Source of the DNA: Anolis carolinensis
Lineage: Eukaryota
NCBI RefSeq assembly: GCF_035594765.1
Contig: NW_026943825.1
Span: 5,819,802-5,883,801 of the forward strand
DNA: 64,000 bases
Direction: 5' to 3'
Each line of letters opens with the position of its first letter. Within the stretch, counting starts at the first letter, position 1. Positions 1-63,095 of this stretch are shown here, piece by piece. The notes below the pieces were generated by a model, which ran no database searches, had not been told where the DNA came from, and saw only the letters and a program-made list of their open reading frames with translations. Both the position numbers and the translations under genes were made by a program.

Positions 1-127
1 GCCATGTCCTGCGTCCAAACAGATGTGCCATTGGCTGATGTCCAGGCCACATCCAAGTATGAATGGGTTTCTGAAATAAAATGTCATGTGTCCCTTACTG
101 ATAACCTTCTGTCTACTGCTTTGTCAG

Positions 128-1158
128 ACTATGCGTTCGTTCACATGGACAATGAGGAGGATGGTAAAGCGGCCATTGAACACCTTAATGGGACGGAACT
201 CTACGGGAGCAGCATTACTGTACAACGCTCTGTGAAAGACCATAAGCATTATGTAAACCGTGAGCAGCATTCTGAACAGGAAACTCTAGATGAAAGGGAC
301 ACATTTGCAGATCCACATTATGAAGAACCACCTGTGTCGTATGATCAGGACTATCGATTCCAGTCTGGGCAGGCAGCAGCATACCGAAATGGGGATGAGT
401 TGGAAGACAACAGCTATGCAGAGGCCTACTCTGCCCAGTCTCATTCCTATGGAAGCAAGTCCTATGACAGCCACAATGCTGATTATGAGAATCGGGCTGC
501 TTATGATGTGGGGGATGACGCGACTGCTTCCTACTCTACACAGTACTCTGATTCCCAATCCACACATGACAGAGCATCAGTGGATGTAGCATACCAATCC
601 GTTTCTGATCGGTTAGCATTAGGTCACAGGAAAACCTCTTCCCGCCATTCACTGTATGAGCGCGTCCGTCTATCCCCACCGAGTAGCAGCTATGAGGACG
701 AGCGTGCAGGCGGTAAAAGCTATACGAGACAAGCGGATGATAGTTACTGCCCGCCGTACAAGTACGTTTGTCGCTCCCCACCACACAGCAGCCGCGACGA
801 TTTCGACAGAAGGGGAAACAGATCAAGTAGCAGGTATACAGGAAGATCAGAAAGTGCTTCTCGCTATACATCAAGATCAGAAAGCGCTTCTCGCTATAGA
901 TCGGAAAGCTCGTCTCGCTATAGATCGGAAAGCTCTTCTCGATATAGATCGGAAAGCTCTTCTCGCTATACCGGAAAATCGGAAAGCTCTTCTCGCTATA
1001 CAGGAAGATCGGAAAGCTCTTCTCGCTATACAGGAAGATCAGAGAGTGCTTCTCGCCATACAGGAAGATCGGAAAGTTCTTCTCACCGTCGACCGTATGA
1101 ACGCAATTATCTTTCTCCGCCACATAGGAGTCGTGAAAACCATAGGAGCCACCGTTAA
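128..1158 (+). CDS. RBM14-like protein, copy A, coding exon 2 (second half of RRM2, Tyr/Ser-rich low-complexity region, RYTGRSESSS repeats); exon 1 lies upstream of the window
   Basis: Acceptor ttgtcag|ACTATGCG at 127/128. DYAFVHMDNEEDGKAAIEHLNGTELYGSSITVQRS resembles RBM14 RRM2, and YERVRLSPP resembles RBM14 YERTRLSPP. Near-identical to 48797-49827. Confidence 0.8.
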
Positions 1159-3010: not shown

Positions 3011-3977
3011 AGATCCAGTTGTCCAGAATATCTGTGGGAGTGCCATTTTTTTTTGGGAGAGGGGCTGTTACAACAATCGAAAATGAATTTCATCCTTGGC
3101 AACAAACATTTATTTATTCACTTGCTTACTGCATTTATATACTGCTTTTCTCACCCCTGGGGGGACTCAAAGCGGTATACAACATAGTAATGGCAAAATT
3201 CAATGGCAAATATACATGTGAAAACATAACAAACAGATCATCAAGTCATAAACAATAAAATAAACATAAACAACTCAAAAAATAACATAATTAGAAATTT
3301 AAATATATAAATCAAACATTTAGGACATGTTTACTAATAAATAATGTTTACTATAAAGGGAAAACCGTTACCTTACCTATATATTTACCCTAACCATTTT
3401 ACCTAAATTAATATACAGTAGAGTCTTACTTATCCAAGACTCACTTATCCAAGGTTCTGGATTATCCAAGCCATTTTTGTAGTCAATGTTTTCAATATAT
3501 CATGATATTTTGGTGCTAAATTCGTAAATATAGTAATTACAACAGGGGTCCTCAAACTTTTAAAGCAGAGGGCCGGTCCATAATACTTCGGACTGTTGAG
3601 GGGCCGAATTATTATTTGAAAAGAAATACGAACAAATTCCTATGCACATTGCATATGTCTTATTTGTAGTGCAATACAACAATAAAAATTAAAGAGCAAT
3701 ACAATATTTAAAAATGAAAACAATTTTAACCAACATAAACCTATTAGGATTTCAATGGAAAGTGTGGGCCTGCTACTGGCCAATGAGATAGTCAAGTTAA
3801 TTATTGTTGTTGTTGTTGTTGTGTGCCTTCAAGTCATTTCAGACTTTGGGTGAGCCTAAGTCTAAAATTATTTATTTATTTATTTACTACCTTTATTTAC
3901 TACCTTTATATCTCACCCTTCTCACCCCGAAGGGGACTCAGAGCAGCTGTATGTACGTACAATATTATTAGCATAGC

Positions 3978-5126
3978 TGTCAAGGACAGAACGCCACAAG
4001 ATTCAAAGTAACAGAGTTTATTAGATTACAGAACTCAAAAATGCCCGTAAAACACAAGGGCCAGGCAGTTTTTGCCTTTAGGAGCAAAAAGGGGCAAAAG
4101 TAAATGTTCAAAAGATAAACCGGATTAAACCGGAGTTTAATCCGGGTAAAAACAAACTGCTTGCTTCAGCCTGGGTATAAACGAAACGAAAGCCAAGGAA
4201 CAAAAGATACAAAGAATGCAACTAATTGGCAGCAGATTCCTCTCTGCTGCCAACACTGTGCTTAGAGTAACTTGCGTCGCTCCCCCACACACACAGCAGA
4301 CAGGATCTCCAACACGAGTAAATCAGCCAAGGATTGTAGCAGTTGAGTAGACCAGTTCCGTTCCGTAGATCAAAGCCAGAAGCAGACGTTTGTAGTTTTT
4401 CCAAGTCCAAGAAGGGGGGAAGACAAGCCGTGGTCAGTTCAGTCCGAGTTCTCAAAGCAGGAGATGGCGTCCGTCAAGAAGACGACGGAAGGTCAAGCTA
4501 ATAAGAGTAAGCACAGGTTTGCACAAACAAATGCCCACACAATCCCTCCCGCCGTCTGACCCTGGATTCCAATCAACTTACGTCACAGCACAGGAAAGCA
4601 CACAAGTCTTCAGGGAAGCGTCCCACACACACACGGATCCCAAGCGTTTGCCCAGATTACCTTGCCCAACGCAATTTGCAATTGCTCTCAAGCCCCATTT
4701 TATGCCAGTTACAAATCTTCATCACTGTCAGCTGTCCTCCTTAACCCGGGCGTTTCCTCATCACTTTCCTCGTCAGAGCTGGAACACCTCTGACTACGCC
4801 CAACAGCATCTCCAGCTGTGGATCCCGTCCCATCCCTCCAGCTAAACCATGGGTCTAATCCTGAAGGTCCCCATTCATCTTCTGTCCCATCATGGCCAGT
4901 GGCACCCACTTCCTCCCTTACCCGAGTCCAATCCATCTCATCCTCCTCTGAGCTAACCAGCCCCTCCTCCATTCTCTCCGTAAACCCTTCGAAAGACTCC
5001 TCGTCAGATGGTGCTGCAAATATGTCTCGCAGTCTTTTTCTCTCTCGCTCCTCGAGAGTATCTGACTCTCGAGGAGTCTTACGCCCACGTCTGTCAGTAA
5101 CAGAGCCATGAGGCTCAATCATAACA
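3978..5126 (-). repeat. LTR 1 (3' LTR of element 1)
   Basis: TGTCAAGG...ATCATAACA termini; PPT GAGAGGGGATAG (minus strand) immediately adjacent at 5127-5138; AATAAA (minus) at 4017-4022. Confidence 0.95.
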
Positions 5127-8100
5127 CTATCCCCTCTCACAAAGGCCTCCTCCCCCGATGGCGGAGAAGTGGCAGTGATACCCTCCGCTATAGCACCACG
5201 ACGACTAGAGGTATCAAGTTTCAACAGCGAACGATGAAAGACTGGATGGACCTTTAAACTAGACGGTAAACGCAAACGAAACGCAACAGAAGAAATCTTT
5301 TTAACGATAGGAAAGGGACCCAAATACCGAGGCGCAAACTTTCCCCCAGCCTGTTTAATATGTTTGGAAGATAACCACACCAAATCCCCTTCTTCCAACT
5401 CCTCCCCTGCCTGCCTGTGGCGGTCAGCCTGAGTCTTCTGCGTTGCCTTAGCTTCCAACAGTAAGCGACGGGCAACATCATGCAATGCAGCCATTTCCGA
5501 AGAGCGGTACACAGGGTCCGAAGAGACCACATTGGTCGACGGCGCCACACCTCCCCGTGGGTGAAAACCATAAGTTAGCTCAAATGGCGTATGCTGACTA
5601 GACGTGTGCACCGCATTGTTGTAAGCAAATTCCGCCACCGGTAACCACTTTACCCAAGCCGTGGGTTGATCTAAACAAAAACAACGCAGATACTGCTCTA
5701 AGAGCCCATTAACCCGTTCCGACTGTCCATCCGTTTGCGGATGGAAAGCTGAAGACACGTTTAACTTAGTCCCCAAACACTCATGGAAGTGTTTCCAAAA
5801 GCGTGACACAAATTGCGGAGCCCTATCTGAAATAATCACCTCGGGTGCTCCGTGCAAACGATAGATGTGCTTTGTAAATAGTAAGGCCAACGTAGGGGCC
5901 GCCGGAATGGTTGAACAAGGAATAAAATGAGCCAGTTTACTAAATAAATCCACCACCACCCAAATACAAGTATAACCCCCAGACTTAGGCAAATCTGAAA
6001 TAAAATCCATGGAAATGATTTGCCATGGCCTCTCCGGAACAGGTAAAGACGATAACAACCCTCTAGGGCGCCCAACAGGCGTCTTACTCTGCTGACAAAC
6101 GGCGCAGCTGTCACAAAAGCGCAGAATGTCTTGCCGCATCTTTGGCCACCAGTAGCTCCTGGTGATAAGCTGTACGGTCTTGAACCTGCCAAAGTGCCCA
6201 GCCATGGGTTCGTCATGGTGGGCTCTAATCACCTCCAACCTGAGGGTCCCTACTGGTACGTAAACCTGCCCCCTACGCACCAATACCCCGTCTTGATCCT
6301 GGAGATGCGGCAGTATGGTACGGTTACCTGCAGAGAGCAGCATCAGTTGCTCCTGAGTCCACACATCATCCTTCTGAGCCTCAAGGATCTGGTCATGTAA
6401 CCCAAGCTCATTATCTACAACACACAGAGAGGCAGTAGGCAAGATGGTCTGACATACTACCTGCTCATTGGTCTTAAATTCCGGCTTGCGGGATAAAGCA
6501 TCGGCCCGCAAGTTTGCCTTCCCCTCCACGAACTGCACCTTGAAGTTAAACCTGGAGAAAAACAAAGCCCAGCGGATTTGACGCTGGTTTAACTTCTTTG
6601 CTGTTTGCAAGTGCTCTAAGTTCTTGTGATCAGATCTGACCACGATCTGGTGCCGTGCCCCTTCAAGCCAGTGCCGCCACACCTCAAACGCCACCTTAAT
6701 CGCCAACAACTCCTTCTCCCATATGGTATAGTTCTGCTCGAAGGGTGTTAGTTGCCGCGAGTAAAATCCACAGGGACGCAAGGTCCCTGAGGAATCCTTC
6801 TGAGACAATACAGCCCCCAACGCGTAGCTAGAAGCGTCCGCTTCTACCACGAACGGTCTGTCAACATCAGGATGGGTTAGTATGTTGTCCGATTGAAAAC
6901 TAGACTTTAGTTGTAGAAACGCCTCGTGAGCTTCCCGCCCCCACACAAATGGCTGTTTCTTGCGCAGAAGCTGCGTCAAAGGTACCGTGAGCTTTGCAAA
7001 ATTCGGAATAAACTCCCGGTAGTAATTAGCGAAACCCAAGAACCTTTGTACATCCTTCTTAGTCTTCAGCTCCTGCCATGAGTTGACGGCGTCAACCTTA
7101 TGTGGGTCCATTTTAAGTTCCCTACCTGACACTACATGACCTAGGAACTCCACTTCAGGCACATGAAAGACGCACTTGGAAGCCTTGGCGAAAAGCCCAT
7201 TAGCCCGCAGTCGGTGCAGAACCTGCTTGACATGTTGACGATGTTCTTTCTCGTCCTTAGAAAAAATCAAGATATCATCCAAATAAATCACTAAAAATTG
7301 GTCAATTAGGTCCCTGAACACATCGTTCATGAACCTCTGGAATACCGCAGGAGCATTACAAAGCCCAAAAGGCATGACTCGGAACTCGTGGCATCCGAAA
7401 CACGTGTTAAATGCCGTCTTCCATTCATCCCCTTCCCGTATACGGATTAAGTTATAGGCCCCCCGCAGGTCAAGCTTGGTAAAGACCTTAGCCCCTTGCA
7501 CCCTTGATAACAGTTCCGAGATTAAAGGGAGCGGGTACCTATCCCGAATGGTGTATTTGTTTAGGATCCGATAGTCACAGACCAGCCTAAGTTCCCCAGT
7601 CTTTTTGGCTACAAAGAATACTGGTGCCGCAGTTGGAGAACTAGATGGGCGAATAAACCCCTTGGCTAAATTTTCATCTAGAAACTCCCGCAAAGCTTGC
7701 CTTTCCGGTACAGTCAAGGCATACAGCCTCCCTGCTGGCAGTTTCGCACCTTCTGCCAACTTGATGGCGCAATCATATGGCCTGTGCGGTGGTAATTTGT
7801 CCGCTTCTCTTTTACAAAATACATCAGAGAACTCCCCATACTCAGCAGGCACTCCCTCCATATCAGAATGAGTAACATTTAGAGTGCAACAGTCCTGCCT
7901 CTTTAAGATCACTTTACGTGTTGCCCAATCTACTTGTGGGTTTACTACAGCTAGCCAATCCATCCCCAGGATCACATCATATCTAGGCAAGCTCGTAATA
8001 TCCCACACAAACGTTCCCGTTACTCCCTGCACCTCCCACGTTACTGCTGAGGTTTCATGGTTAACCACCCCAGTCTCCAGCAGTCTCCCATCTGCTCCTT

Positions 8101-8332
8101 CCACCCACACGTCGCATGCCTTGCGCACTCTAGGAATGCCATGCTTCTTAGCAAACTCAATATCTACATAGGAGACCGTAGCCCCTGAGTCCAGCAGTGC
8201 CAAAGTAGAAACAAGTTCCCTTCCCCCAACAGATAATGTAATGGGTACGAAAACATGCTTCCTCCCCTCAGTTGACTGCTTGAGGAGCCCTAGTGCGTTG
8301 GACTCACGTCGCACTAGGGCTGGCCTTTTCCC
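4709..8332 (-). CDS. pol: Pol (protease, RT, RNase H, integrase, acidic LTR-encoded tail), element 1, expressed by -1 frameshift
   Basis: LLDSGA protease, YLDD RT, RNase H (EADAS...EKELLA), HHCC zinc-binding motif, DDE core, GPF motif; ORF uninterrupted. Confidence 0.95.
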   Translation of the reverse strand, partial: GKRPALVRRESNALGLLKQSTEGRKHVFVPITLSVGGRELVSTLALLDSGATVSYVDIEFAKKHGIPRVRKACDVWVEGADGRLLETGVVNHETSAVTWEVQGVTGTFVWDITSLPRYDVILGMDWLAVVNPQVDWATRKVILKRQDCCTLNVTHSDMEGVPAEYGEFSDVFCKREADKLPPHRPYDCAIKLAEGAKLPAGRLYALTVPERQALREFLDENLAKGFIRPSSSPTAAPVFFVAKKTGELRLVCDYRILNKYTIRDRYPLPLISELLSRVQGAKVFTKLDLRGAYNLIRIREGDEWKTAFNTCFGCHEFRVMPFGLCNAPAVFQRFMNDVFRDLIDQFLVIYLDDILIFSKDEKEHRQHVKQVLHRLRANGLFAKASKCVFHVPEVEFLGHVVSGRELKMDPHKVDAVNSWQELKTKKDVQRFLGFANYYREFIPNFAKLTVPLTQLLRKKQPFVWGREAHEAFLQLKSSFQSDNILTHPDVDRPFVVEADASSYALGAVLSQKDSSGTLRPCGFYSRQLTPFEQNYTIWEKELLAIKVAFEVWRHWLEGARHQIVVRSDHKNLEHLQTAKKLNQRQIRWALFFSRFNFKVQFVEGKANLRADALSRKPEFKTNEQVVCQTILPTASLCVVDNELGLHDQILEAQKDDVWTQEQLMLLSAGNRTILPHLQDQDGVLVRRGQVYVPVGTLRLEVIRAHHDEPMAGHFGRFKTVQLITRSYWWPKMRQDILRFCDSCAVCQQSKTPVGRPRGLLSSLPVPERPWQIISMDFISDLPKSGGYTCIWVVVDLFSKLAHFIPCSTIPAAPTLALLFTKHIYRLHGAPEVIISDRAPQFVSRFWKHFHECLGTKLNVSSAFHPQTDGQSERVNGLLEQYLRCFCLDQPTAWVKWLPVAEFAYNNAVHTSSQHTPFELTYGFHPRGGVAPSTNVVSSDPVYRSSEMAALHDVARRLLLEAKATQKTQADRHRQAGEELEEGDLVWLSSKHIKQAGGKFAPRYLGPFPIVKKISSVAFRLRLPSSLKVHPVFHRSLLKLDTSSRRGAIAEGITATSPPSGEEAFVRGDSVMIEPHGSVTDRRGRKTPRESDTLEERERKRLRDIFAAPSDEESFEGFTERMEEGLVSSEEDEMDWTRVREEVGATGHDGTEDEWGPSGLDPWFSWRDGTGSTAGDAVGRSQRCSSSDEESDEETPGLRRTADSDEDL
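8286..8332 (-). promoter_or_regulatory. -1 programmed ribosomal frameshift signal (second copy at 13478-13524)
   Basis: Slippery G GGA AAA followed by a 12-bp stem AGCCCTAGTGCG/CGCACTAGGGCT; the -1 frame is the pol frame. Confidence 0.85.
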
Positions 8333-9114
8333 GAAAGCTGGGAAGGTTTCACATTACAATTTTTGGCAAAATGCCCAGCCTTCCCACAGTACAAACACAA
8401 GCCCAGCTGCCTCCTACGGCTCTTTTCCTCTGTAGACAGCTTTTTAAAGACCCCAAGCTCCATGGGCTCTTCCCCCATCACCACAGGTGCCCTGGTTACA
8501 TGCATGGGTGGCGCACACATTACTTTTGAGTGTTTACGAGCCTCGAACCTTGCGTCTAAACGCAGCACCTTAGCTACTAAGGCGTCCCAGCTTTCAGCCG
8601 GCTCCAAGCGTGCTAATTCATCCTGGAGCATATCACTTAACCCGGCAGTAAATAAAAGCATGAATGCATTTTCCCCCCAATCCAGCTGGTGGCGATACAG
8701 GTTAAACTTATTTAAGTAATCCAAAACAGTCCCCTTTCCCTGTTTCAACCGATACAGAGCCCACCCAGCGTTCTCCGTGCGGAGAGGATCCCCAAAAGTA
8801 TCAGTTAACAACTTTTTGAAATTATTCAAATTGTCCTTGACTGGGTCATTTCCCAAAATTAAATTAGTGGCCCATTGTCCTGCGGGACCGGTCAACAAAC
8901 TCAAAATAAAGGCCACCTTGCTAGTGTCTGTAGGAAAAGCATGAGCACTGAGCTGAGAAAAATAAAGCTCCACTTGTGCCAAAAAGGTTGGCAACTTGCA
9001 CCTGGTTCCGTCAAAGCGTTCAGGAGTCAAAACATGTCCTTTCACAGCCTGAGCTGTTTGGCTAACGGTAAAAGCCGTTTGCAATTGGTCTACTTTGGCC
9101 CTTAACTCATCCAT
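8314..9114 (-). CDS. gag: Gag (PEG10/RTL-like capsid plus CCHC knuckle), element 1
   Basis: PERFDG motif, EPMEL motif, CLYCGKAGHFAKNC knuckle. Confidence 0.95.
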   Translation of the reverse strand: MDELRAKVDQLQTAFTVSQTAQAVKGHVLTPERFDGTRCKLPTFLAQVELYFSQLSAHAFPTDTSKVAFILSLLTGPAGQWATNLILGNDPVKDNLNNFKKLLTDTFGDPLRTENAGWALYRLKQGKGTVLDYLNKFNLYRHQLDWGENAFMLLFTAGLSDMLQDELARLEPAESWDALVAKVLRLDARFEARKHSKVMCAPPMHVTRAPVVMGEEPMELGVFKKLSTEEKSRRRQLGLCLYCGKAGHFAKNCNVKPSQLSGKGQP

Positions 9115-9169
9115 CGTCTTCCTGACGGGTTTATTGCTGCAATAAACTTTTTATGGGCGTTGGGCAATC

Positions 9170-10318
9170 TGTCAAGGACAGAACGCCACAAGATTCAAAG
9201 TAACAGAGTTTATTAGATTACAGAACTCAAAAATGCCCGTAAAACACAAGGGCCAGGCAGTTTTTGCCTTTAGGAGCAAAAAGGGGCAAAAGTAAATGTT
9301 CAAAAGATAAACCGGATTAAACCGGAGTTTAATCCGGGTAAAAACAAACTGCTTGCTTCAGCCTGGGTATAAACGAAACGAAAGCCAAGGAACAAAAGAT
9401 ACAAAGAATGCAACTAATTGGCAGCAGATTCCTCTCTGCTGCCAACACTGTGCTTAGAGTAACTTGCGTCGCTCCCCCACACACACAGCAGACAGGATCT
9501 CCAACACGAGTAAATCAGCCAAGGATTGTAGCAGTTGAGTAGACCAGTTCCGTTCCGTAGATCAAAGCCAGAAGCAGACGTTTGTAGTTTTTCCAAGTCC
9601 AAGAAGGGGGGAAGACAAGCCGTGGTCAGTTCAGTCCGAGTTCTCAAAGCAGGAGATGGCGTCCGTCAAGAAGACGACGGAAGGTCAAGCTAATAAGAGT
9701 AAGCACAGGTTTGCACAAACAAATGCCCACACAATCCCTCCCGCCGTCTGACCCTGGATTCCAATCAACTTACGTCACAGCACAGGAAAGCACACAAGTC
9801 TTCAGGGAAGCGTCCCACACACACACGGATCCCAAGCGTTTGCCCAGATTACCTTGCCCAACGCAATTTGCAATTGCTCCCAAGCCCCATTTTATGCCAG
9901 TTACAAATCTTCATCACTGTCAGCTGTCCTCCTTAACCCGGGCGTTTCCTCATCACTTTCCTCGTCAGAGCTGGAACACCTCTGACTACGCCCAACAGCA
10001 TCTCCAGCTGTGGATCCCGTCCCATCCCTCCAGCTAAACCATGGGTCTAATCCTGAAGGTCCCCATTCATCTTCTGTCCCATCATGGCCAGTGGCACCCA
10101 CTTCCTCCCTTACCCGAGTCCAATCCATCTCATCCTCCTCTGAGCTAACCAGCCCCTCCTCCATTCTCTCCGTAAACCCTTCGAAAGACTCCTCGTCAGA
10201 TGGTGCTGCAAATATGTCTCGCAGTCTTTTTCTCTCTCGCTCCTCGAGAGTATCTGACTCTCGAGGAGTCTTACGCCCACGTCTGTCAGTAACAGAGCCA
10301 TGAGGCTCAATCATAACA
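9170..10318 (-). repeat. LTR 2 (shared central LTR)
   Basis: Copy of LTR 1 at +5192. Confidence 0.95.
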
Positions 10319-13300
10319 CTATCCCCTCTCACAAAGGCCTCCTCCCCCGATGGCGGAGAAGTGGCAGTGATACCCTCCGCTATAGCACCACGACGACTAG
10401 AGGTATCAAGTTTCAACAGCGAACGATGAAAGACTGGATGGACCTTTAAACTAGACGGTAAACGCAAACGAAACGCAACAGAAGAAATCTTTTTAACGAT
10501 AGGAAAGGGACCCAAATACCGAGGCGCAAACTTTCCCCCAGCCTGTTTAATATGTTTGGAAGATAACCACACCAAATCCCCTTCTTCCAACTCCTCCCCT
10601 GCCTGCCTGTGGCGGTCAGCCTGAGTCTTCTGCGTTGCCTTAGCTTCCAACAGTAAGCGACGGGCAACATCATGCAATGCAGCCATTTCCGAAGAGCGGT
10701 ACACAGGGTCCGAAGAGACCACATTGGTCGACGGCGCCACACCTCCCCGTGGGTGAAAACCATAAGTTAGCTCAAATGGCGTATGCTGACTAGACGTGTG
10801 CACCGCATTGTTGTAAGCAAATTCCGCCACCGGTAACCACTTTACCCAAGCCGTGGGTTGATCTAAACAAAAACAACGCAGATACTGCTCTAAGAGCCCA
10901 TTAACCCGTTCCGACTGTCCATCCGTTTGCGGATGGAAAGCTGAAGACACGTTTAACTTAGTCCCCAAACACTCATGGAAGTGTTTCCAAAAGCGTGACA
11001 CAAATTGCGGAGCCCTATCTGAAATAATCACCTCGGGTGCTCCGTGCAAACGATAGATGTGCTTTGTAAATAGTAAGGCCAACGTAGGGGCCGCCGGAAT
11101 GGTTGAACAAGGAATAAAATGAGCCAGTTTACTAAATAAATCCACCACCACCCAAATACAAGTATAACCCCCAGACTTAGGCAAATCTGAAATAAAATCC
11201 ATGGAAATGATTTGCCATGGCCTCTCCGGAACAGGTAAAGACGATAACAACCCTCTAGGGCGCCCAACAGGCGTCTTACTCTGCTGACAAACGGCGCAGC
11301 TGTCACAAAAGCGCAGAATGTCTTGCCGCATCTTTGGCCACCAGTAGCTCCTGGTGATAAGCTGTACGGTCTTGAACCTGCCAAAGTGCCCAGCCATGGG
11401 TTCGTCATGGTGGGCTCTAATCACCTCCAACCTGAGGGTCCCTACTGGTACGTAAACCTGCCCCCTACGCACCAATACCCCGTCTTGATCCTGGAGATGC
11501 GGCAGTATGGTACGGTTACCTGCAGAGAGCAGCATCAGTTGCTCCTGAGTCCACACATCATCCTTCTGAGCCTCAAGGATCTGGTCATGTAACCCAAGCT
11601 CATTATCTACAACACACAGAGAGGCAGTAGGCAAGATGGTCTGACATACTACCTGCTCATTGGTCTTAAATTCCGGCTTGCGGGATAAAGCATCGGCCCG
11701 CAAGTTTGCCTTCCCCTCCACGAACTGCACCTTGAAGTTAAACCTGGAGAAAAACAAAGCCCAGCGGATTTGACGCTGGTTTAACTTCTTTGCTGTTTGC
11801 AAGTGCTCTAAGTTCTTGTGATCAGATCTGACCACGATCTGGTGCCGTGCCCCTTCAAGCCAGTGCCGCCACACCTCAAACGCCACCTTAATCGCCAACA
11901 ACTCCTTCTCCCATATGGTATAGTTCTGCTCGAAGGGTGTTAGTTGCCGCGAGTAAAATCCACAGGGACGCAAGGTCCCTGAGGAATCCTTCTGAGACAA
12001 TACAGCCCCCAACGCGTAGTTAGAAGCGTCCGCTTCTACCACGAACGGTCTGTCAACATCAGGATGGGTTAGTATGTTGTCCGATTGAAAACTAGACTTT
12101 AGTTGTAGAAACGCCTCGTGAGCTTCCCGCCCCCACACAAATGGCTGTTTCTTGCGCAGAAGCTGCGTCAAAGGTACCGTGAGCTTTGCAAAATTCGGAA
12201 TAAACTCCCGGTAGTAATTAGCGAAACCCAAGAACCTTTGTACATCCTTCTTAGTCTTCAGCTCCTGCCATGAGTTGACGGCGTCAACCTTATGTGGGTC
12301 CATTTTAAGTTCCCTACCTGACACTACATGACCTAGGAACTCCACTTCAGGCACATGAAAGACGCACTTGGAAGCCTTGGCGAAAAGCCCATTAGCCCGC
12401 AGTCGGTGCAGAACCTGCTTGACATGTTGACGATGTTCTTTCTCGTCCTTAGAAAAAATCAAGATATCATCCAAATAAATCACTAAAAATTGGTCAATTA
12501 GGTCCCTGAACACATCGTTCATGAACCTCTGGAATACCGCAGGAGCATTACAAAGCCCAAAAGGCATGACTCGGAACTCGTGGCATCCGAAACACGTGTT
12601 AAATGCCGTCTTCCATTCATCCCCTTCCCGTATACGGATTAAGTTATAGGCCCCCCGCAGGTCAAGCTTGGTAAAGACCTTAGCCCCTTGCACCCTTGAT
12701 AACAGTTCCGAGATTAAAGGCAGCGGGTACCTATCCCGAATGGTGTATTTGTTTAGGATCCGATAATCGCAGACCAACCTAAGTTCCCCAGTCTTTTTGG
12801 CTACAAAGAATACCGGTGCCGCAGTTGGAGAACTAGATGGGCGAATAAACCCCTTGGCTAAATTTTCATCTAGAAACTCCCGCAAAGCTTGCCTTTCCGG
12901 TACAGTCAAGGCATACAGCCTCCCTGCTGGCAGTTTCGCACCTTCTGCCAACTTGATGGCGCAATCATATGGCCTGTGCGGTGGTAATTTGTCCGCTTCT
13001 CTTTTACAAAATACATCAGAGAACTCCCCATACTCAGCAGGCACTCCCTCCATATCAGAATGAGTAACATTTAGAGTGCAACAATCCTGCCTCTTTAAGA
13101 TCACTTTACGTGTTGCCCAATCTACATGTGGGTTTACTACAGCTAGCCAATCCATCCCCAGGATCACATCATATCTAGGCAAGCTCGTAATATCCCACAC
13201 AAACGTTCCCGTTACTCCCTGCACCTCCCACGTTACTGCTGAGGTTTCATGGTTAACCACCCCAGTCTCCAGCAGTCTCCCATCTGCTCCTTCCACCCAC

Positions 13301-13524
13301 ACGTCGCATGCCTTGCGCACTCTAGGAATGCCATGCTTCTTAGCAAACTCAATATCTACATAGGAGACCGTAGCCCCTGAGTCCAGCAGTGCCAAAGTAG
13401 AAACAAGTTCCCTTCCCCCAACAGATAATGTAATGGGTACGAAAACATGCTTCCTCCCCTCAGTTGACTGCTTGAGGAGCCCTAGTGCGTTGGACTCACG
13501 TCGCACTAGGGCTGGCCTTTTCCC
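9901..13524 (-). CDS. pol: Pol, element 2
   Basis: Same domains as element 1; two visible amino-acid differences (Q/H, S/N). Confidence 0.95.
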   Translation of the reverse strand, partial: GKRPALVRRESNALGLLKQSTEGRKHVFVPITLSVGGRELVSTLALLDSGATVSYVDIEFAKKHGIPRVRKACDVWVEGADGRLLETGVVNHETSAVTWEVQGVTGTFVWDITSLPRYDVILGMDWLAVVNPHVDWATRKVILKRQDCCTLNVTHSDMEGVPAEYGEFSDVFCKREADKLPPHRPYDCAIKLAEGAKLPAGRLYALTVPERQALREFLDENLAKGFIRPSSSPTAAPVFFVAKKTGELRLVCDYRILNKYTIRDRYPLPLISELLSRVQGAKVFTKLDLRGAYNLIRIREGDEWKTAFNTCFGCHEFRVMPFGLCNAPAVFQRFMNDVFRDLIDQFLVIYLDDILIFSKDEKEHRQHVKQVLHRLRANGLFAKASKCVFHVPEVEFLGHVVSGRELKMDPHKVDAVNSWQELKTKKDVQRFLGFANYYREFIPNFAKLTVPLTQLLRKKQPFVWGREAHEAFLQLKSSFQSDNILTHPDVDRPFVVEADASNYALGAVLSQKDSSGTLRPCGFYSRQLTPFEQNYTIWEKELLAIKVAFEVWRHWLEGARHQIVVRSDHKNLEHLQTAKKLNQRQIRWALFFSRFNFKVQFVEGKANLRADALSRKPEFKTNEQVVCQTILPTASLCVVDNELGLHDQILEAQKDDVWTQEQLMLLSAGNRTILPHLQDQDGVLVRRGQVYVPVGTLRLEVIRAHHDEPMAGHFGRFKTVQLITRSYWWPKMRQDILRFCDSCAVCQQSKTPVGRPRGLLSSLPVPERPWQIISMDFISDLPKSGGYTCIWVVVDLFSKLAHFIPCSTIPAAPTLALLFTKHIYRLHGAPEVIISDRAPQFVSRFWKHFHECLGTKLNVSSAFHPQTDGQSERVNGLLEQYLRCFCLDQPTAWVKWLPVAEFAYNNAVHTSSQHTPFELTYGFHPRGGVAPSTNVVSSDPVYRSSEMAALHDVARRLLLEAKATQKTQADRHRQAGEELEEGDLVWLSSKHIKQAGGKFAPRYLGPFPIVKKISSVAFRLRLPSSLKVHPVFHRSLLKLDTSSRRGAIAEGITATSPPSGEEAFVRGDSVMIEPHGSVTDRRGRKTPRESDTLEERERKRLRDIFAAPSDEESFEGFTERMEEGLVSSEEDEMDWTRVREEVGATGHDGTEDEWGPSGLDPWFSWRDGTGSTAGDAVGRSQRCSSSDEESDEETPGLRRTADSDEDL

Positions 13525-14306
13525 GAAAGCTGGGAAGGTTTCACATTACAATTTTTGGCAAAATGCCCAGCATTCCCACAGTACAAACACAAGCCCAGCT
13601 GCCTCCTACGGCTCTTTTCCTCTGTAGACAGCTTTTTAAAGACCCCAAGCTCCATGGGCTCTTCCCCCATCACCACAGGTGCCCTGGTTACATGCATGGG
13701 TGGCGCACACATTGCTTTTGAGTGTTTACGAGCCTCGAACCTTGCATCTAAACGCAGCACCTTAGCTACTAAGGCGTCCCAGCTTTCAGCCGGCTCCAAG
13801 CGTGCTAATTCATCCTGGAGCATATCACTTAACCCGGCAGTAAATAAAAGCATGAATGCATTTTCCCCCCAATCCAGCTGGTGGCGATACAGGTTAAACT
13901 TATTTAAGTAATCCAAAACAGTCCCCTTTCCCTGTTTCAACCGATACAGAGCCCACCCAGCGTTCTCCGTGCGGAGAGGATCCCCAAAAGTATCAGTTAA
14001 CAACTTTTTGAAATTATTCAAATTGTCCTTGACTGGGTCATTTCCCAAAATTAAATTAGTGGCCCATTGTCCTGCGGGACCGGTCAACAAACTCAAAATA
14101 AAGGCCACCTTGCTAGTGTCTGTAGGAAAAGCATGAGCACTGAGCTGAGAAAAATAAAGCTCCACTTGTGCCAAAAAGGTTGGCAACTTGCACCTGGTTC
14201 CGTCAAAGCGTTCAGGAGTCAAAACATGTCCTTTCACAGCCTGAGCTGTTTGGATAACGGTAAAAGCCGTTTGCAATTGGTCTACTTTGGCCCTTAACTC
14301 ATCCAT
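13506..14306 (-). CDS. gag: Gag, element 2
   Basis: Same as element 1 with three substitutions (S/I, V/A, K/N). Confidence 0.95.
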   Translation of the reverse strand: MDELRAKVDQLQTAFTVIQTAQAVKGHVLTPERFDGTRCKLPTFLAQVELYFSQLSAHAFPTDTSKVAFILSLLTGPAGQWATNLILGNDPVKDNLNNFKKLLTDTFGDPLRTENAGWALYRLKQGKGTVLDYLNKFNLYRHQLDWGENAFMLLFTAGLSDMLQDELARLEPAESWDALVAKVLRLDARFEARKHSKAMCAPPMHVTRAPVVMGEEPMELGVFKKLSTEEKSRRRQLGLCLYCGNAGHFAKNCNVKPSQLSGKGQP

Positions 14307-14348
14307 CGTCTTCCTGACGGGTTTATTGCTGCAATAAACTTTTTATGG

Positions 14349-14359
14349 GCGTTGGGCAA
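14349..14359 (-). promoter_or_regulatory. Self-priming PBS TTGCCCAACGC (second copy at 9157-9167)
   Basis: No TGG tRNA-type PBS; exact complement at 15046-15056 in the LTR, about 30 nt downstream of a CATAAAA TATA-like box (15082-15088). Confidence 0.8.
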
Positions 14360-14361
14360 TC

Positions 14362-15510
14362 TGTCAAGGACAGAACGCCACAAGATTCAAAGTAACAGAG
14401 TTTATTAGATTACAGAACTCAAAAATGCCCGTAAAACACAAGGGCCAGGCAGTTTTTGCCTTTAGGAGCAAAAAGGGGCAAAAGTAAATGTTCAAAAGAT
14501 AAACCGGATTAAACCGGAGTTTAATCCGGGTAAAAACAAACTGCTTGCTTCAGCCTGGGTATAAACGAAACGAAAGCCAAGGAACAAAAGATACAAAGAA
14601 TGCAACTAATTGGCAGCAGATTCCTCTCTGCTGCCAACACTGTGCTTAGAGTAACTTGCGTCGCTCCCCCACACACACAGCAGACAGGATCTCCAACACG
14701 AGTAAATCAGCCAAGGATTGTAGCAGTTGAGTAGACCAGTTCCGTTCCGTAGATCAAAGCCAGAAGCAGACGTTTGTAGTTTTTCCAAGTCCAAGAAGGG
14801 GGGAAGACAAGCCGTGGTCAGTTCAGTCCGAGTTCTCAAAGCAGGAGATGGCGTCCGTCAAGAAGACGACGGAGGGTCAAGCTAATAAGAGTAAGCACAG
14901 GTTTGCACAAACAAATGCCCACACAATCCCTCCCGCCGTCTGACCCTGGATTCCAATCAACTTACGTCACAGCACAGGAAAGCACACAAGTCTTCAGGGA
15001 AGCGTCCCACACACACACGGATCCCAAGCGTTTGCCCAGATTACCTTGCCCAACGCAATTTGCAATTGTTCCCAAGCCCCATTTTATGCCAGTTACAAAT
15101 CTTCATCACTGTCAGCTGTCCTCCTTAACCCGGGCGTTTCCTCATCACTTTCCTCGTCAGAGCTGGAACACCTCTGACTACGCCCAACAGCATCTCCAGC
15201 TGTGGATCCCGTCCCATCCCTCCAGCTAAACCATGGGTCTAATCCTGAAAGTCCCCATTCATCTTCTGTCCCATCATGGCCAGTGGCACCCACTTCCTCC
15301 CTTACCCGAGTCCAATCCATCTCATCCTCCTCTGAGCTAACCAGCCCCTCCTCCATTCTCTCCGTAAACCCTTCGAAAGACTCCTCGTCAGATGGTGCTG
15401 CAAATATGTCTCGCAGTCTTTTTCTCTCTCGCTCCTCGAGAGTATCTGACTCTCGAGGAGTCTTACGCCCACGTCTGTCAGTAACAGAGCCATGAGGCTC
15501 AATCATAACA
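14362..15510 (-). repeat. LTR 3 (5' LTR of element 2)
   Basis: Copy of LTR 1 at +10384; element homology stops at 15510. Confidence 0.95.
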
Positions 15511-20426: not shown

Positions 20427-20554
20427 NNNNNNNNNNNNNNNNNNNNNNNNNNNNNNNNNNNNNNNNNNNNNNNNNNNNNNNNNNNNNNNNNNNNNNNNNN
20501 NNNNNNNNNNNNNNNNNNNNNNNNNNNNNNNNNNNNNNNNNNNNNNNNNNNNNN
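20427..20554. other. Assembly gap (128 N)
   Basis: Run of n. Confidence 1.
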
Positions 20555-22318
20555 CGTAATGCTTCTCATATATTAACCAACTGGATAAGTAAGGCATTTT
20601 TTCACCTTTCCAGTATGTTCAACATCTTAGACCAGGGGTCCTCATACTTTTTAATTGGAGGGCCGGTTCATGGTCCCTCAGGCTGTTGGGGGGCCGAACT
20701 ATGATTAACTGGTCCAGGGAGGCCGGACTATGATGAACTGGTCCAAAATTAGGATTGTTGTTGTTGTGTGCCCTCAAGTTGTTTCAGACTTAGGTCAACC
20801 CTAAATCTAAAGTTTAGGACGGGCCAGGTAAATGATCTTGGAGGGCCATATCTGGCCCACGGGCCTTTGTTCGGGGACCCATGTCTGTAAGTTTATTTGA
20901 AAAACGTAGGGAGAGAAAAATAGAAACTTTTGGCTATATTAAGTGATATTTTGGGGTGGGAACATTCCTGTTGGTCCTCCTTCTGGGGTGTACACAGTCT
21001 ACCCCATTGTTCAATATAGCACCTTGATATACAGACTATGATTCCATGCAAAAAATGCCATTACGGCTAGATCCACCTGAAGCCAGTGCACAGGTCAGTG
21101 TGTTTCTGTGCTGCGTGTTTGTGTCTGAAGGCAGGTTGCTGCCAGGGAGCATAAGTGGCTTTAGAGCTATGCTTAGAAATGTTGAAGACAGTGTGGCTGA
21201 CTGGACTTCTGGAAGGCAGAAAGTTGAAAGGGAGCAGACGTCTTGGGGAAGAGCATCACCAGGGGGTTTTAAGCATTTGATGTAGGTCTACTGTGAGGAT
21301 GACCCTTCTCTCTGCATAAACGGCAAGCAGTGTTCCAACGTGGTGGCGGCAATTTTTAAAAAAGGTTAAAATGTCAGGTGAGCAGCACCTGTCTTAATGG
21401 AGCCGGTGATGATGCTGTTAGTTCCTGAAAATGGCAAAGCAAGGCGCATGGCCAGTAGTAACTGGGAATGAATCTGACCTTGTGCTGTGTTGGACTGGCT
21501 ATCAGCCAGAAGTTTAAAATTCATCTACAGGCTTCATGATGCGTGTCAATAGTGCTCCTTTTGTTGAGCTGCAGGCTATATGTTTCTGTAGGCCCAGAAT
21601 ATACCACCTTCCTGTGTTTGTTCAGGAAGGAATTCTGAGCTGACTGAGCCTGAGTCTTCATACCTCTCGGACCCAAAAAGGCCAATCCTGTGAGATCTCC
21701 TACATGGAGCCCATCTGACCTCTCATCAGGGGAAAACAACACATTCAAAACAGCAGCCCCTCTCCCAAGATTGATGAGCTGTGGGTGTCATGGTCACTAT
21801 CAGAGACCATTTCCCCAAACCTCCAATAATTGTTCACATTGGTTTCCAAGCCTCTGTAAGCATTTCTTTAGCTTCTTTCAACACAGTTGTGGCAGCTGAT
21901 TTAATTGGGGTGTTCCAGAGAGCACTTTGTCTATGCAGCTGCCAGCTTCCAAAGAGAATATTGTTGGGATCTAGGAGTATCATTCTATAGGCCTGCTGGT
22001 GTATTTCTAGTTCTTGCTGCCAATGCTGTACAATCAGGAAACATCTGCTGCCGCCAAGCATTTTGCTTCCCAAGCTGCTGGCTTGGCTGATTGGCATTAA
22101 GATAGAGGGTTGACCCCACCTTTTTTGTGGTGAAAAATAATATGGCACAAGGAAGCGTTTGTTCATCTCCTGCACTATGAGTTGTGGCGGACTGATCCAG
22201 CTGGTCGTTCCCTGGCTTGTTTCCATTCCCACTTAAAAAGTCTGACCTGCTGTGCTTTTGCTGTGAACTGTTCTTAACAAACCTTTATAGCTGCCCTTCT
22301 TGCGTCTGTTTCTTCAAG

Positions 22319-22971
22319 GCAAACGAATGCGCGTGCAGTTGTCCACCAGCCGGCTCAGGACCGCGCCCGGGATGGGAGACAAGAGTGGCTGCTACCGGTG
22401 TGGGAAGGAGGGTCACTGGTCTAAAGAGTGCCCGGTCGATCGCACGGGGCAAGTGCCCGAGTTGACCGAAACCTATAGCGAGCAATACGGAGTGGTGCGC
22501 ACCCCCTACCCTACGGGCTATGGGGACCCCGTGTATTACGATGACCCTTACGGAATGGTGGATTACTATAAACGGTACCGCGCGAGGTCGGCCGCGGCGT
22601 ACGGGGCTTCTGCATACGACGCTTATGCAGAGCAAACCATGGCCCAGTATTCCCAGTATGCCCAGTATTCGCAAGCCACGGCTATGGCCAGCCGCCTCAC
22701 TACCGCCTTAGACCCCTACGAGAGGGCCTTGCTTCCAGCCTCGGGAACTGCGGTGGCGGTTGCTGCCGCCGCCGCTGCGGCCGCGACCTCTTCCTTTTAC
22801 ACCCGGGATAGAAGCCCTCTGCGTCGCTCGGCCGCCGTGGCTTCCACCACCGGAGACGTGTACGGATACGAGCGGGTTCAGCTATCTCCCGTCCCGCGAT
22901 CCTCCCTCTACGATGTCCAGCGGTTCGGGCGGGATGCAGGCGCGGACAGGTTGCGGTACTCCGCGTTTTGA
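22319..22971 (+). CDS. RBM4: RBM4 second coding exon (CCHC knuckle, Ala-rich C-terminus); spliced protein 354 aa
   Basis: [45 protein letters not shown] stop; donor GAG|GTGAGC at 22980. Confidence 0.95.
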
Positions 22972-61943: not shown

Positions 61944-63095
61944 TCATGGCGCACTCCATAGAGACTTGAGTTGGATATGCTGGGCCGTGCGCAATGCTCT
62001 GGAGGAACCAGGGGCCGAATCGTGAGGGGAGGATTGCGGTGCCGCATGTCCATGATGCCGGGCGCTTTGGGCTCTGACTGGGCAGTGGCTGTGGAGCTGG
62101 TGGCATACGGGTTGCACGTGGTAGTGCGCCTCTGCCTCTCGGAGATGCCTGGGTGGGGATCTGACCTGTGGTTGGTCGTCTGCAATGTGTCCGGCACATC
62201 CCTGAGGCCTGTCGGGTGCCACGTGCCTGGGACATGCTTCTCCTGTTGTTCCAATGTGTCTGTGGAGCTGTGGGCTCTGTCTGTGAGCCGGCTTGCCTTT
62301 CTTGTGCCGCTGATGGTGCTGGAGCGCGGCGCAGCATTTCAAGGCAATCGCGAGGACGTTTTTCCCCATGAAGATGGAGGAGATGCGCTGGTCGCGGCAG
62401 AGGAGCAGCAGCCCGCCGCGGATGAAGATGGTGGCCACGTTGACGCTGGCCAGGCTCAGCAGCGGGTACAGCGTGTCCGGCTGCGGGCCGCACACGCCCA
62501 GCTCGTTCAGCGACACGCAAGGCAGGACGAGCAGCAGCCCGTAGCAATAGAAGAAGGTCAAGCCCTCGGCCCACAAGGGCAGCACCCGCCCTTGCGGCTC
62601 CCACAAGCTGGCCTGGATCTCCAGCACGTCCAGCAGGTCCAGCACCACCCAAAACAGCCGCCCGCGGAGCTCGTCTTTCTTCCGGAAGCTGGCGGCGGCC
62701 TGGGCCACCAACTCAGCGGCTCCTAACACCGTGTAGAGCGCCGGGATGCAGACAGAGAGCAAAAGGGTGAGGGTGCGCCGGGCCAGCGGGTCGGGCACCC
62801 GCACCTCCGTGGCGTAATGCTGGTAGATGAAGTAGAGCTTGATCTCCAAGGCGAAGGCGAAGAGGAACCACAGGACCATGGCGTAGCCCCGCTGGGCCTG
62901 CCGGGCCTCACCGCCCACCCACGCCGTGGCGTAGCGCAGCGCCAGCAGGAAGAAGAGGTCCCCGGCCAGCGCCAGCGCCCCGACCCCCAGCCGCCGGGCC
63001 CCGGCGCTCTGCTCCACCAGGTAGACATCCATGGCTCCCATGGTGCAGACGATGACCACGGCCACCACACAGGTGTGCGGAGGGTGAGGCTCCAT
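61944..63095 (-). CDS. TMEM121-like multipass membrane protein (383 aa) with His/Pro/Gln-rich tail
   Basis: MDVYLVEQ, RGYAMVLWFL, LEIKLYF, LRGRLFWVVLDLLD, LPLWAEGLTFFYCY match the TMEM121 family; acceptor ctctccaaag| 6 nt before the ATG. Confidence 0.88.
   Translation of the reverse strand: MEPHPPHTCVVAVVIVCTMGAMDVYLVEQSAGARRLGVGALALAGDLFFLLALRYATAWVGGEARQAQRGYAMVLWFLFAFALEIKLYFIYQHYATEVRVPDPLARRTLTLLLSVCIPALYTVLGAAELVAQAAASFRKKDELRGRLFWVVLDLLDVLEIQASLWEPQGRVLPLWAEGLTFFYCYGLLLVLPCVSLNELGVCGPQPDTLYPLLSLASVNVATIFIRGGLLLLCRDQRISSIFMGKNVLAIALKCCAALQHHQRHKKGKPAHRQSPQLHRHIGTTGEACPRHVAPDRPQGCAGHIADDQPQVRSPPRHLREAEAHYHVQPVCHQLHSHCPVRAQSARHHGHAAPQSSPHDSAPGSSRALRTAQHIQLKSLWSAP

What the first reader, a model, noticed from the sequence alone, without database searches (positions are those of the whole stretch)
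4982..5032. Retrotransposon integrase tail carries a LEDGF/p75-IBD (TND-interacting) motif mimic in place of a chromodomain
Seen: after the integrase GPF/HPVFH region there is no chromodomain. Pol continues into an acidic tail containing ERERKRLRDIFAAPSDEESFEGF, identical in all three LTRs (also 10174-10224, 15366-15416), with nearby CK2-type sites (SDEE, SSEEDE, SSSDEESDEE). Established: LEDGF/p75 IBD and other TFIIS-N-terminal-domain ligands (JPO2/CDCA7L, IWS1, MLL1, PogZ) use a short helix, an acidic phosphorylatable linker and FxGF. From memory, to be verified, JPO2 has ADIFNAPSDDEEFVGF and IWS1 has ADIFGESGDEEEEEFTGF. Tf1/sushi relatives usually carry a chromodomain here, and lentiviral integrase uses LEDGF through a different surface. 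Inference: this lineage tethers its intasome to LEDGF/HDGFL2 or another TND elongation factor by motif mimicry, directing insertion into transcribed H3K36me chromatin. That would be convergent with HIV and is not something I know to be described.
Basis: partly seen in the sequence, partly recalled or inferred. Interest (0 to 1): 0.92.

Follow-up and report, generated by a model that had tools for sequence, protein, structure and literature searches.

The report
LEDGF-binding-like motif in lizard integrase tail
A young jumping gene of the green anole lizard has lost the chromatin-reading domain of its integrase. In its place it has a tail, encoded inside its own LTR and kept by selection, whose core peptide closely matches the motif host proteins use to dock onto the chromatin tether LEDGF. 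It may therefore choose insertion sites as HIV does but by mimicry, although binding has not been tested.

Summary
The element is an intact Ty3/gypsy retrotransposon of Anolis carolinensis on the minus strand, arranged LTR-int-LTR-int-LTR at 3977-15510. Pol has 1201 aa and no chromodomain, and its last 139 codons lie inside the 3' LTR (U3). The peptide ERERKRLRDIFAAPSDEESFEGF (aa 1089-1111, nt 4982-5050) is there.

- **PDB match:** an unbiased search with 32 aa returned, as best of 177,635 sequences, the LEDGF IBD-JPO2 motif 1 chimera 6EMO, aligned on the motif (12/20 identical, E 0.043, which is marginal).
- **Selection:** against a diverged subfamily (dS 0.6-0.8) the LTR-encoded tail has omega 0.16. 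The motif window has omega 0.04 (11 synonymous, 2 conservative changes), as tight as RT and IN. A third lineage shows 7 synonymous and 0 non-synonymous changes.
- **Recurrence:** similar helix-acidic linker-FxGF motifs occur in Podarcis relatives whose tails are otherwise unalignable.
- **Not tested:** binding to LEDGF/HRP2 and insertion bias.

The scan had already noted this motif on other pieces of the same genome. I found no paper describing it. Verdict: a real, selected short linear motif, probably a TND/LEDGF tether (about 0.55), and a new variant of integrase tethering by host mimicry.

The parts
3977..15510 (-). Tandem array LTR-internal-LTR-internal-LTR of one Ty3/gypsy family, period 5192 nt. 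No target-site duplication flanks the array.
   Evidence: Self-comparison gives 16 mismatches over the 6342-nt overlap. Flanks are TCACT and GCTAT.
3978..5126 (-). 3' LTR of unit 1 (TG...CA, about 1149 nt). AATAAA lies near its 3' end, so U3 is long.
   Evidence: The termini are confirmed by 5-bp TSDs of sister copies L001 (TTTAC) and L002 (GACCC).
9170..10318 (-). Middle LTR, which is the 5' LTR of unit 1 and the 3' LTR of unit 2.
14362..15510 (-). 5'-most LTR. It carries the same open frame (15093-15506) but is not joined to a pol.
8314..9114 (-). gag of unit 1 (266 aa; Retrotrans_gag, Ty3_capsid, CCHC knuckle). The second copy is at 13506-14306.
4709..8314 (-). pol of unit 1 (1201 aa + stop): PR, RT, RNase H, IN (H2C2, rve, SH3_Tf2-1), no chromodomain. 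The second intact copy is at 9901-13506.
5127..5160 (-). Polypurine tract region just upstream of the 3' LTR. PPT plus LTR start encode the peptide RGDSVM, which is conserved in relatives (GDSVM, GDGVM).
4709..5218 (-). Acidic, disordered integrase tail (aa 1033-1201 plus stop).
   Evidence: Composition is E26 S20 R19 D18 G18 of 169. AF2 pLDDT is below 50 almost throughout.
4709..5126 (-). The part of the tail encoded inside the LTR (U3): 139 codons including the stop.
   Evidence: omega is 0.16-0.18, with no indels, against 43-51 indel nt in the non-coding LTR.
5027..5092 (-). Basic, bipartite-NLS-like stretch RRGRK...RKRLR (aa 1075-1096). Its first 14 codons (5051-5092) show no nucleotide difference between subfamilies.
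   Evidence: The NLS reading is an inference from the sequence only.
5021..5056 (-). Predicted short helix LEERERKRLRDI (aa 1087-1098), which would be the helix part of the motif.
   Evidence: It is the only helix AF2 places in the tail, at low confidence (pLDDT 50-70). L, I and F align with V, I and F of JPO2 M1.
4982..5050 (-). TIM/IBM-like motif ERERKRLRDIFAAPSDEESFEGF (aa 1089-1111). It has an 8-aa acidic linker AAPSDEES with a CK2-type site at S1103 (S-D-E-E, nt 5006-5008) and FEGF at 4982-4993. Other copies are at 10174-10242 and 15366-15434.
4784..4855 (-). Second invariant block of the tail, DPWFSWRDGTGSTAGDAVGRSQRC (aa 1154-1177). Its function is unknown.
   Evidence: 6 nt differences in 72.

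Best explanation
This is an active-lineage Ty3/gypsy retrotransposon of Anolis carolinensis that descends from chromodomain-bearing elements and has lost the chromodomain. Its pol frame reads across the polypurine tract and 139 codons into the 3' LTR, giving the integrase a disordered acidic tail. That much is shown. Purifying selection keeps the tail as protein, and is strongest on a peptide made of a short basic helix ending in DIF, an 8-residue acidic linker with a CK2-type serine, and FEGF. That is also shown. This peptide has the architecture and near-sequence of the FxGF class of TND-interacting (IBD-binding) motifs, and is closest to JPO2/CDCA7L motif 1. I infer that the tail docks the intasome onto the TFIIS-N-terminal-type domain of the H3K36me3 readers LEDGF/p75 (PSIP1) or HRP2 (HDGFL2), possibly strengthened by CK2 phosphorylation. 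That would steer integration towards transcribed chromatin. It would replace or supplement chromodomain targeting and would be mechanistically different from lentiviral integrase, which binds the same domain through its catalytic-core dimer.
For: The structure, LTR boundaries and the pol frame running into the LTR come. The element has no chromodomain, yet lies in a 97%-supported 26-row clade that is mostly chromodomain-bearing. In PDB phmmer searches, 6emo_A (LEDGF IBD-JPO2 M1) is the best hit of 177,635 sequences for the window peptide (E 0.043, 12/20 identical). It is the only hit at E<=10 for the second-subfamily variant. The motif features match the published TIM definition in PMC9987994: helix, acidic linker of 8-16 aa with CK2 sites, and FxGF, which is essential for LEDGF/HRP2. 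NG86 against L001 gives omega 0.038 for PR-RT-RH, 0.032 for IN, 0.16 for the LTR tail, 0.037 for the motif window and 0.17 for the rest. Non-synonymous versus synonymous counts in the LTR tail, compared with site numbers, give p=9e-8. Motif versus the rest of the tail gives p=0.03. The motif shows 12 nt differences in 69 nt but only A>E and E>D. Against L004 it shows 7 synonymous and 0 non-synonymous codon changes. In 13 subfamily tails the D and F of DIF and both F and the G of FxGF are invariant. The only swaps are I/L, S/T, A/E and E/D, plus one E>K at the x of FxGF. The motif recurs in Podarcis families and in P0126: the strict pattern was found in 2 of 150 other tails against 0.003 expected. 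It is the only alignable stretch between the Anolis and Podarcis tails. Three further copies inspected have intact pol, and two of them have young LTR pairs and 5-bp TSDs.
Against: The PDB E-values are marginal, and a profile of the motif alignment returned only unrelated IsdH hits at E 0.14. The Podarcis motifs alone found nothing in PDB. The linker is at the minimum published length. The whole tail is constrained, including blocks of unknown function, so the motif could serve another partner. Other rows of the 26-row clade, including snake elements placed nearest without strong support, lack the motif, so at least four gains or losses are needed. Of the copies inspected, one lies in an intron of an EBF/COE gene, one lies 1.3 kb from PRRT3, and the others are not in called genes, which gives no evidence of genic targeting. 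The AF2 model is of low quality (mean pLDDT 38).
Confidence: 0.55

Rival explanations
1. The motif is a functional short linear motif but binds another reader of acidic-aromatic peptides. Candidates are a different TND (IWS1, TFIIS, Elongin A, PPP1R10, MED26) or a non-TND partner such as histones, an import factor or a TFIIH p62-type PH domain. It would then serve nuclear import, chromatin binding or transcription rather than LEDGF/HRP2 tethering.
For: Strong protein-level constraint is shown, but the partner is not. TIMs bind several TNDs with overlapping rules. The tail holds further conserved acidic/Trp blocks and an NLS-like stretch.
Against: According to the review, FxGF is specific to and essential for LEDGF/HRP2 partners. 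The only PDB match is a LEDGF-bound motif.
Confidence: 0.25
2. The acidic tail acts within the element itself, and the likeness to JPO2 M1 is coincidental. For example, it could be an autoinhibitory or CK2-regulated tail that modulates integrase DNA binding, multimerisation, stability or packaging.
For: The whole tail is under purifying selection, not only the motif. Acidic Ser-rich tails are common in this clade even without FxGF, as in P0009 and P0011.
Against: The match is point-by-point to a validated ligand (hydrophobic positions, APSD CK2 site, F.GF). The same architecture recurs in otherwise unalignable tails.
Confidence: 0.15
3. Conservation reflects DNA-level function of U3 (enhancer or promoter elements), not a protein.
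For: The stretch lies in U3. The adjacent 42 nt (5051-5092) show no nucleotide change at all between subfamilies.
Against: Within the motif the DNA is more diverged than the tail average (12 of 69 nt), but nearly all changes are synonymous. The frame is kept open for 139 codons without indels, while the non-coding LTR has 43-51 indel nt.
Confidence: 0.03
4. The frame is a chance read-through into the LTR and the tail has no function.
For: None beyond the general possibility.
Against: omega is 0.16 with p=9e-8. The tail is intact in all subfamilies. Shuffles give 3.5e-5 for the pattern.
Confidence: 0.02

Closest known systems
JPO2/CDCA7L motif 1, an IBD-binding (TND-interacting) motif bound to the LEDGF/p75 IBD (PDB 6EMO)
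   Same: Helix hydrophobics, an 8-aa acidic linker with the serine of APSD at the same place, and F.GF. 12 of 20 residues are identical.
   Different: It sits at the C-terminal tail of a retrotransposon integrase and is encoded in an LTR. Binding is untested. Whether it was captured from the host gene or converged is unknown.
Lentiviral integrase-LEDGF/p75 tethering
   Same: The proposed host partner and the proposed outcome (integration into transcribed chromatin) are the same.
   Different: HIV integrase uses its folded catalytic-core dimer interface on the IBD, not a disordered FxGF peptide. This is established knowledge and was not tested here.
Gammaretroviral (MLV) integrase C-terminal tail binding the BET ET domain
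   Same: A short conserved motif of about 16 aa in a flexible integrase C-terminal tail tethers the intasome to a chromatin reader (PMC5053271).
Ty5 integrase targeting domain binding Sir4 (host-motif imitation with a phosphorylation switch)
   Same: A retrotransposon integrase peptide that imitates a host ligand and depends on phosphorylation. This is from my own knowledge and was not checked here.
   Different: The host is yeast, the target is heterochromatin, and the motif is 6 aa.
Chromoviruses (Ty3/gypsy elements with an integrase chromodomain)
   Same: Phylogenetic home, domain order, the SH3_Tf2-1 domain, and pol reading into the LTR in relatives.
   Different: The chromodomain is absent. 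About 65-70 codons appear to be deleted between GEEAFV and RGDSVM, which is an inference.
POGZ, a pogo-transposase-derived host protein that binds the LEDGF IBD
   Same: A protein related to mobile elements that carries an IBD-binding motif. It is listed among IBD partners in PMC11640333.
   Different: It is a domesticated DNA-transposase gene, not an active retroelement.

Membership tests
TND-interacting / IBD-binding motif, FxGF class | Lies in an intrinsically disordered region | tested here: met
   The tail is 49% D/E/S/G. AF2 pLDDT is below 50 over nearly all of it, from a low-quality model.
TND-interacting / IBD-binding motif, FxGF class | Short helix with conserved F/V/L/I anchor residues | tested here: inconclusive
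   The only predicted helix of the tail is LEERERKRLRDI, at pLDDT 50-70. L, I and F align with V, I and F of JPO2 M1. This is prediction only.
TND-interacting / IBD-binding motif, FxGF class | Acidic flexible linker of 8-16 residues with Ser/Thr CK2 sites | tested here: met
   The linker AAPSDEES is 8 aa with S-D-E-E. Subfamilies swap S/T, A/E and E/D only. The definition is from PMC9987994.
TND-interacting / IBD-binding motif, FxGF class | FxGF, essential for LEDGF/HRP2 partners | tested here: met
   FEGF is present. Both F and the G are invariant in 13 subfamily tails, and one copy reads FKGF.
TND-interacting / IBD-binding motif, FxGF class | Direct binding to a TND (LEDGF IBD or HRP2) and gain of affinity on CK2 phosphorylation | not testable with these tools
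No wet assay is available.
Chromovirus | Chromodomain at the integrase C-terminus | tested here: not met
   There is no PF00385 hit. Only 38 aa lie between the HPVFH of the SH3 domain and the LTR start.
Chromovirus | Integrase groups with chromodomain-bearing elements | tested here: met
   The element lies in a 26-row clade with 97% support that includes Crotalus, Podarcis and Anolis elements with PF00385.
Ty3/gypsy (Metaviridae) LTR retrotransposon | gag, then PR-RT-RH-IN order, TG...CA LTRs, PPT, 5-bp TSD | tested here: met
   TSDs are seen in sister copies L001 and L002. The tandem array in the window has none.

The most novel reading that the evidence does not exclude
Squamate chromovirus-derived retrotransposons carry interchangeable, LTR-encoded integrase tails that hold mimics of host chromatin-tethering peptides. 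In this family the mimic is a CK2-switchable FxGF motif that binds LEDGF/HRP2 and redirects integration to H3K36me3 gene bodies after loss of the chromodomain. In Podarcis families the same kind of motif sits beside a chromodomain, and in sister families there is an HMGN-like RRSAR nucleosome-binding end. U3 turnover would then double as a way to evolve new integration targeting. This would be a non-lentiviral use of LEDGF through the cell's own ligand groove.
Probability: 0.45. Interest if true: 0.9.

Novelty: new variant of a known kind. Interest (0 to 1): 0.8.

Why it matters
Integrase tethering decides where retroelements land. Known cases use a folded domain (chromodomain, the HIV catalytic core on LEDGF) or a tail peptide for another reader (MLV-BET, Ty5-Sir4). 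A retrotransposon that copies the cell's own LEDGF/HRP2 ligand would be a convergent, mechanistically distinct route to the same tether as HIV. It would show that U3 sequence can encode targeting modules. It would also give a natural, compact peptide for studying TND-ligand rules and their phospho-switch outside mammals, and it would predict a testable shift of insertion sites in a vertebrate genome that has many young LTR elements.

Tried and rejected
- **Complex prediction of the tail with PSIP1, HDGFL2 and other TNDs:** left out.
- **Verifying the IWS1, POGZ and KMT2A motifs by tool:** failed. Only JPO2 M1 surfaced from PDB. The original papers (Tesina 2015, Sharma 2018, Cermakova 2021) are not held.
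- **PDB searches with the Podarcis and P0126 motifs:** these found nothing. A profile of the motif alignment gave only chance IsdH hits. These short-motif searches are therefore at the edge of significance.
- **Tail-only homologue search:** it found only Anolis clusters. The 1.84-billion-protein search with IN plus tail aligned no representative beyond the SH3 domain. The Podarcis tail search added only P0302.
- **ESM Atlas look-alikes of the motif region:** no usable hit.
- **AF2 of the last 261 aa:** poor (mean pLDDT 38), so no fold search was made.
- **Contigs of four runs laid on the element:** they show a high-copy family and that the one common variant inside the motif (4988 T>C) is synonymous. 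Whether the runs are RNA is only a guess, so expression is not shown.
- **P0001 DNA:** not on record. Sister copies L001, L002 and L004 were used instead.
- **DNA-level U3 constraint and chance read-through:** rejected on the synonymous to non-synonymous pattern.
- **Restrictions observed:** The N run at 20427-20554 was not touched.

Full report
**What is there**

The finding lies on the minus strand, in a tandem array LTR-internal-LTR-internal-LTR spanning 3977-15510 with a period of 5192 nt. There are 16 mismatches over the 6342-nt overlap, and the LTRs differ from each other at 1-4 positions. Each unit has an intact gag (266 aa) and an intact pol (1201 aa). Pfam finds aspartyl protease, RVT_1, RNase H, Integrase_H2C2, rve and SH3_Tf2-1 ending at aa 1032, and no chromodomain.

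The LTR begins TGTTATG at 5126, directly after a purine-rich tract. Sister copies fetched from the Anolis carolinensis assembly (L001, L002) confirm the TG...CA ends, with perfect 5-bp target duplications TTTAC and GACCC. The last 139 codons of pol, including the stop, therefore lie inside the 3' LTR, in U3. An AATAAA sits near the far end of the LTR.

The host is the green anole. The only protein clusters sharing the tail are UniRef entries of Anolis carolinensis, at 86-98% identity.

**The observation**

The peptide ERERKRLRDIFAAPSDEESFEGF is pol aa 1089-1111, nt 4982-5050. The coding DNA is identical in all three LTRs, but the copy in the 5'-most LTR is not attached to a pol.

Shuffling the tail gives FxGF alone in 1.2% of trials. 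The full pattern (hydrophobic-F, 5-12 aa acidic/Ser linker without K/R, FxGF) appears in 3.5e-5 of trials. The pattern was defined after the fact.

**Likeness to a known ligand**

A phmmer search of all PDB chain sequences with 32 aa around the motif returned 6emo_A as best of 177,635 distinct sequences. This is the single-chain LEDGF/p75 IBD-JPO2 motif 1 construct, and the alignment falls exactly on the JPO2 part. KRLRDIFAAPSDEESFEGFT aligns with KEVADIFNAPSDDEEFVGFR, 12 of 20 identical, E 0.043. The variant from the second subfamily again returned 6emo_A as the only hit at E<=10 (E 0.63).

These E-values are marginal. A profile built from all motif-like sequences gave only unrelated IsdH hits at E 0.14, and the Podarcis motifs alone found nothing. 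The weight of the result is that the single hit is a validated LEDGF ligand.

The published definition of a TND-interacting motif is an obligate short helix with F/V/L/I anchors and an acidic linker of 8-16 residues rich in CK2-phosphorylated Ser/Thr. FxGF is optional in general but essential for LEDGF and HRP2 (PMC9987994). The sequence meets it as follows:
- **Helix:** L, I and F sit at the positions of V, I and F in JPO2 M1.
- **Linker:** AAPSDEES, with the serine of APSD in a CK2 context.
- **FxGF:** FEGF.

AlphaFold2 on the last 261 aa was poor (mean pLDDT 38). The only helix it places in the tail is LEERERKRLRDI, immediately before the linker.

**Selection**

L001 and L002 belong to a subfamily 85% identical in DNA to the window element. 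Pol is intact in both, and their LTR pairs differ at 5-6 sites. Nei-Gojobori estimates against L001:

| Segment | omega | Note |
|---|---|---|
| PR-RT-RH | 0.038 | dS 0.78 |
| IN | 0.032 | |
| Pre-LTR part of the tail | 0.38 | |
| LTR-encoded tail | 0.16 | |
| Motif window, aa 1080-1115 | 0.037 | 11 synonymous, 2 non-synonymous |
| Rest of the LTR tail | 0.17 | |

Further points:
- The excess of synonymous change in the LTR tail is highly significant (p=9e-8). The motif differs from the rest of the tail at p=0.03.
- The 69 nt of the motif carry 12 differences, more than the tail average. Only A>E and E>D result, and both keep the linker acidic.
- Against a third lineage (L004) the motif has 7 synonymous and no non-synonymous codon changes.
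- The coding 418 nt of the LTR have no indels and are 88% identical. The non-coding 732 nt have 43-51 indel nt and are 81% identical.
- In 13 subfamily tails the key residues are invariant. The swaps are I/L, S/T, A/E and E/D, plus one E>K at the x of FxGF.
- In contigs of four public runs the only common variant within the motif, 4988 T>C, is synonymous (GAA to GAG).

**Relatives**

In an integrase tree of 266 sequences the family sits in a 97%-supported clade of 26 rows from Anolis, Podarcis, Crotalus, Gekko and Rhineura, most with a chromodomain. The peptide RGDSVM, encoded by the PPT and LTR start, recurs as GDSVM or GDGVM in relatives. Reading into the LTR is thus a trait of the clade. 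In the window family only 38 aa separate the SH3 HPVFH from the LTR start, which is consistent with a deletion of the chromodomain. That is an inference.

Motifs of the same build occur in other members:
- **Podarcis muralis, first family:** RWREMFETSEDEEDSFRGF, preceded by a second copy ending LEGF or MEGF, both downstream of a chromodomain.
- **Podarcis muralis, second family:** YFDDWLFTPTLSASTFQGF.
- **P0126 (from a metagenome assembly, taxon unknown):** QWKTVFESDENEDTDFLGF.

Between P0126 and the Podarcis family the motif is a conserved island in an otherwise diverged tail. Between the Anolis and Podarcis tails the motif is the only alignable stretch (E 0.013 and 0.052). The strict pattern occurs in 2 of 150 other tails against 0.003 expected. 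On the tree at least four gains or losses are needed, and I cannot tell convergence from repeated loss.

**Mechanism**

The following is shown:
- There is an LTR-encoded integrase tail.
- It is under purifying selection.
- The most constrained element has the sequence features of an FxGF-class TIM.

The following is inferred:
- The tail binds the TND of LEDGF/p75 or HRP2.
- CK2 phosphorylation enhances that binding.
- This targets integration to H3K36me3 chromatin.

Nothing here tests binding. The handful of copies inspected gives no sign either way about genic bias. One is antisense in an intron of an EBF/COE gene, one is 1.3 kb from PRRT3, and the others are outside called genes. The window copy sits among other repeats, about 46 kb from a TMEM121-like ORF.

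**Novelty**

Full-text searches for LEDGF, FxGF, TND or TIM together with retrotransposon, chromovirus or integrase found no description of such a motif in a retroelement. The known analogues are:
- the MLV integrase tail and BET;
- Ty5 and Sir4 (my own knowledge);
- HIV integrase on LEDGF, through a folded surface;
- POGZ, a transposase-derived IBD partner.

Earlier notes of this scan report the same motif on other pieces of the same genome. I tested their claims independently here. I class it as a new variant of a known kind.

Noticed in passing
window 3977-15510: The two units share a middle LTR (LTR-int-LTR-int-LTR), and the array has no target-site duplication (TCACT versus GCTAT). Single sister copies have perfect 5-bp TSDs. 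This suggests the array arose by recombination rather than by one integration.
   Followed up: partly
P0013/P0018 (Anolis) and P0009 (Podarcis) C-termini: The LTR-encoded tails of chromodomain-bearing sister families end in RRSARIAA or RRSARLKA. This resembles the HMGN nucleosome-binding core and may be another tethering mimic. An earlier scan note says the same.
   Followed up: partly
window 5051-5092: The 14 codons encoding RRGRKTPRESDTLE, just upstream of the motif, show no nucleotide difference between subfamilies that are otherwise 12-15% diverged. This points to a DNA- or RNA-level constraint in addition to coding, or to very strong codon constraint.
   Followed up: partly
window 4784-4855: A second invariant tail block, DPWFSWRDGTGSTAGDAVGRSQRC, followed by SSSDEESDEE. 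Its function is unknown.
   Followed up: no
window 4982-5050 versus L004: 7 of the 18 synonymous codon differences between the window tail and the closely related copy L004 fall in the 23-codon motif. This could be a mosaic or gene-conversion patch.
   Followed up: no
window 9129-9168: The sequence after the 5' LTR (GATTGCCCAACGCCC...) does not start with the TGG expected of a tRNA primer-binding site. The element may self-prime like Tf1/sushi relatives.
   Followed up: no
P0274 / L005: An NCBI gene model named opioid growth factor receptor-like protein 1 isoform X4 is in fact RT-RNase H sequence of this retrotransposon family. This is an annotation chimera.
   Followed up: partly
P0030, P0302, P0126 C-termini: The tails of the Podarcis family and of P0126 share a conserved C-terminal K-x-LLCWKR peptide of unknown function.
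   Followed up: no
window 4499-5020 (read laying): In three of four runs the summed contig depth over this part of the LTR is 10-80 times that of the internal region, and it is uneven within the LTR. Many contigs also break off at 4156. The cause could be solo LTRs, a shared LTR segment or transcripts, and it cannot be resolved from contigs.
   Followed up: no
window 4-1158, 42124-43050, 48616-49827; 22300-22971; 61944-63185: Other content of the window: repeated ORFs with a weak RRM hit (probably LINE ORF1-like), a CCHC zinc-knuckle ORF, and a single-exon TMEM121/CECR6-family ORF on the minus strand.
   Followed up: partly
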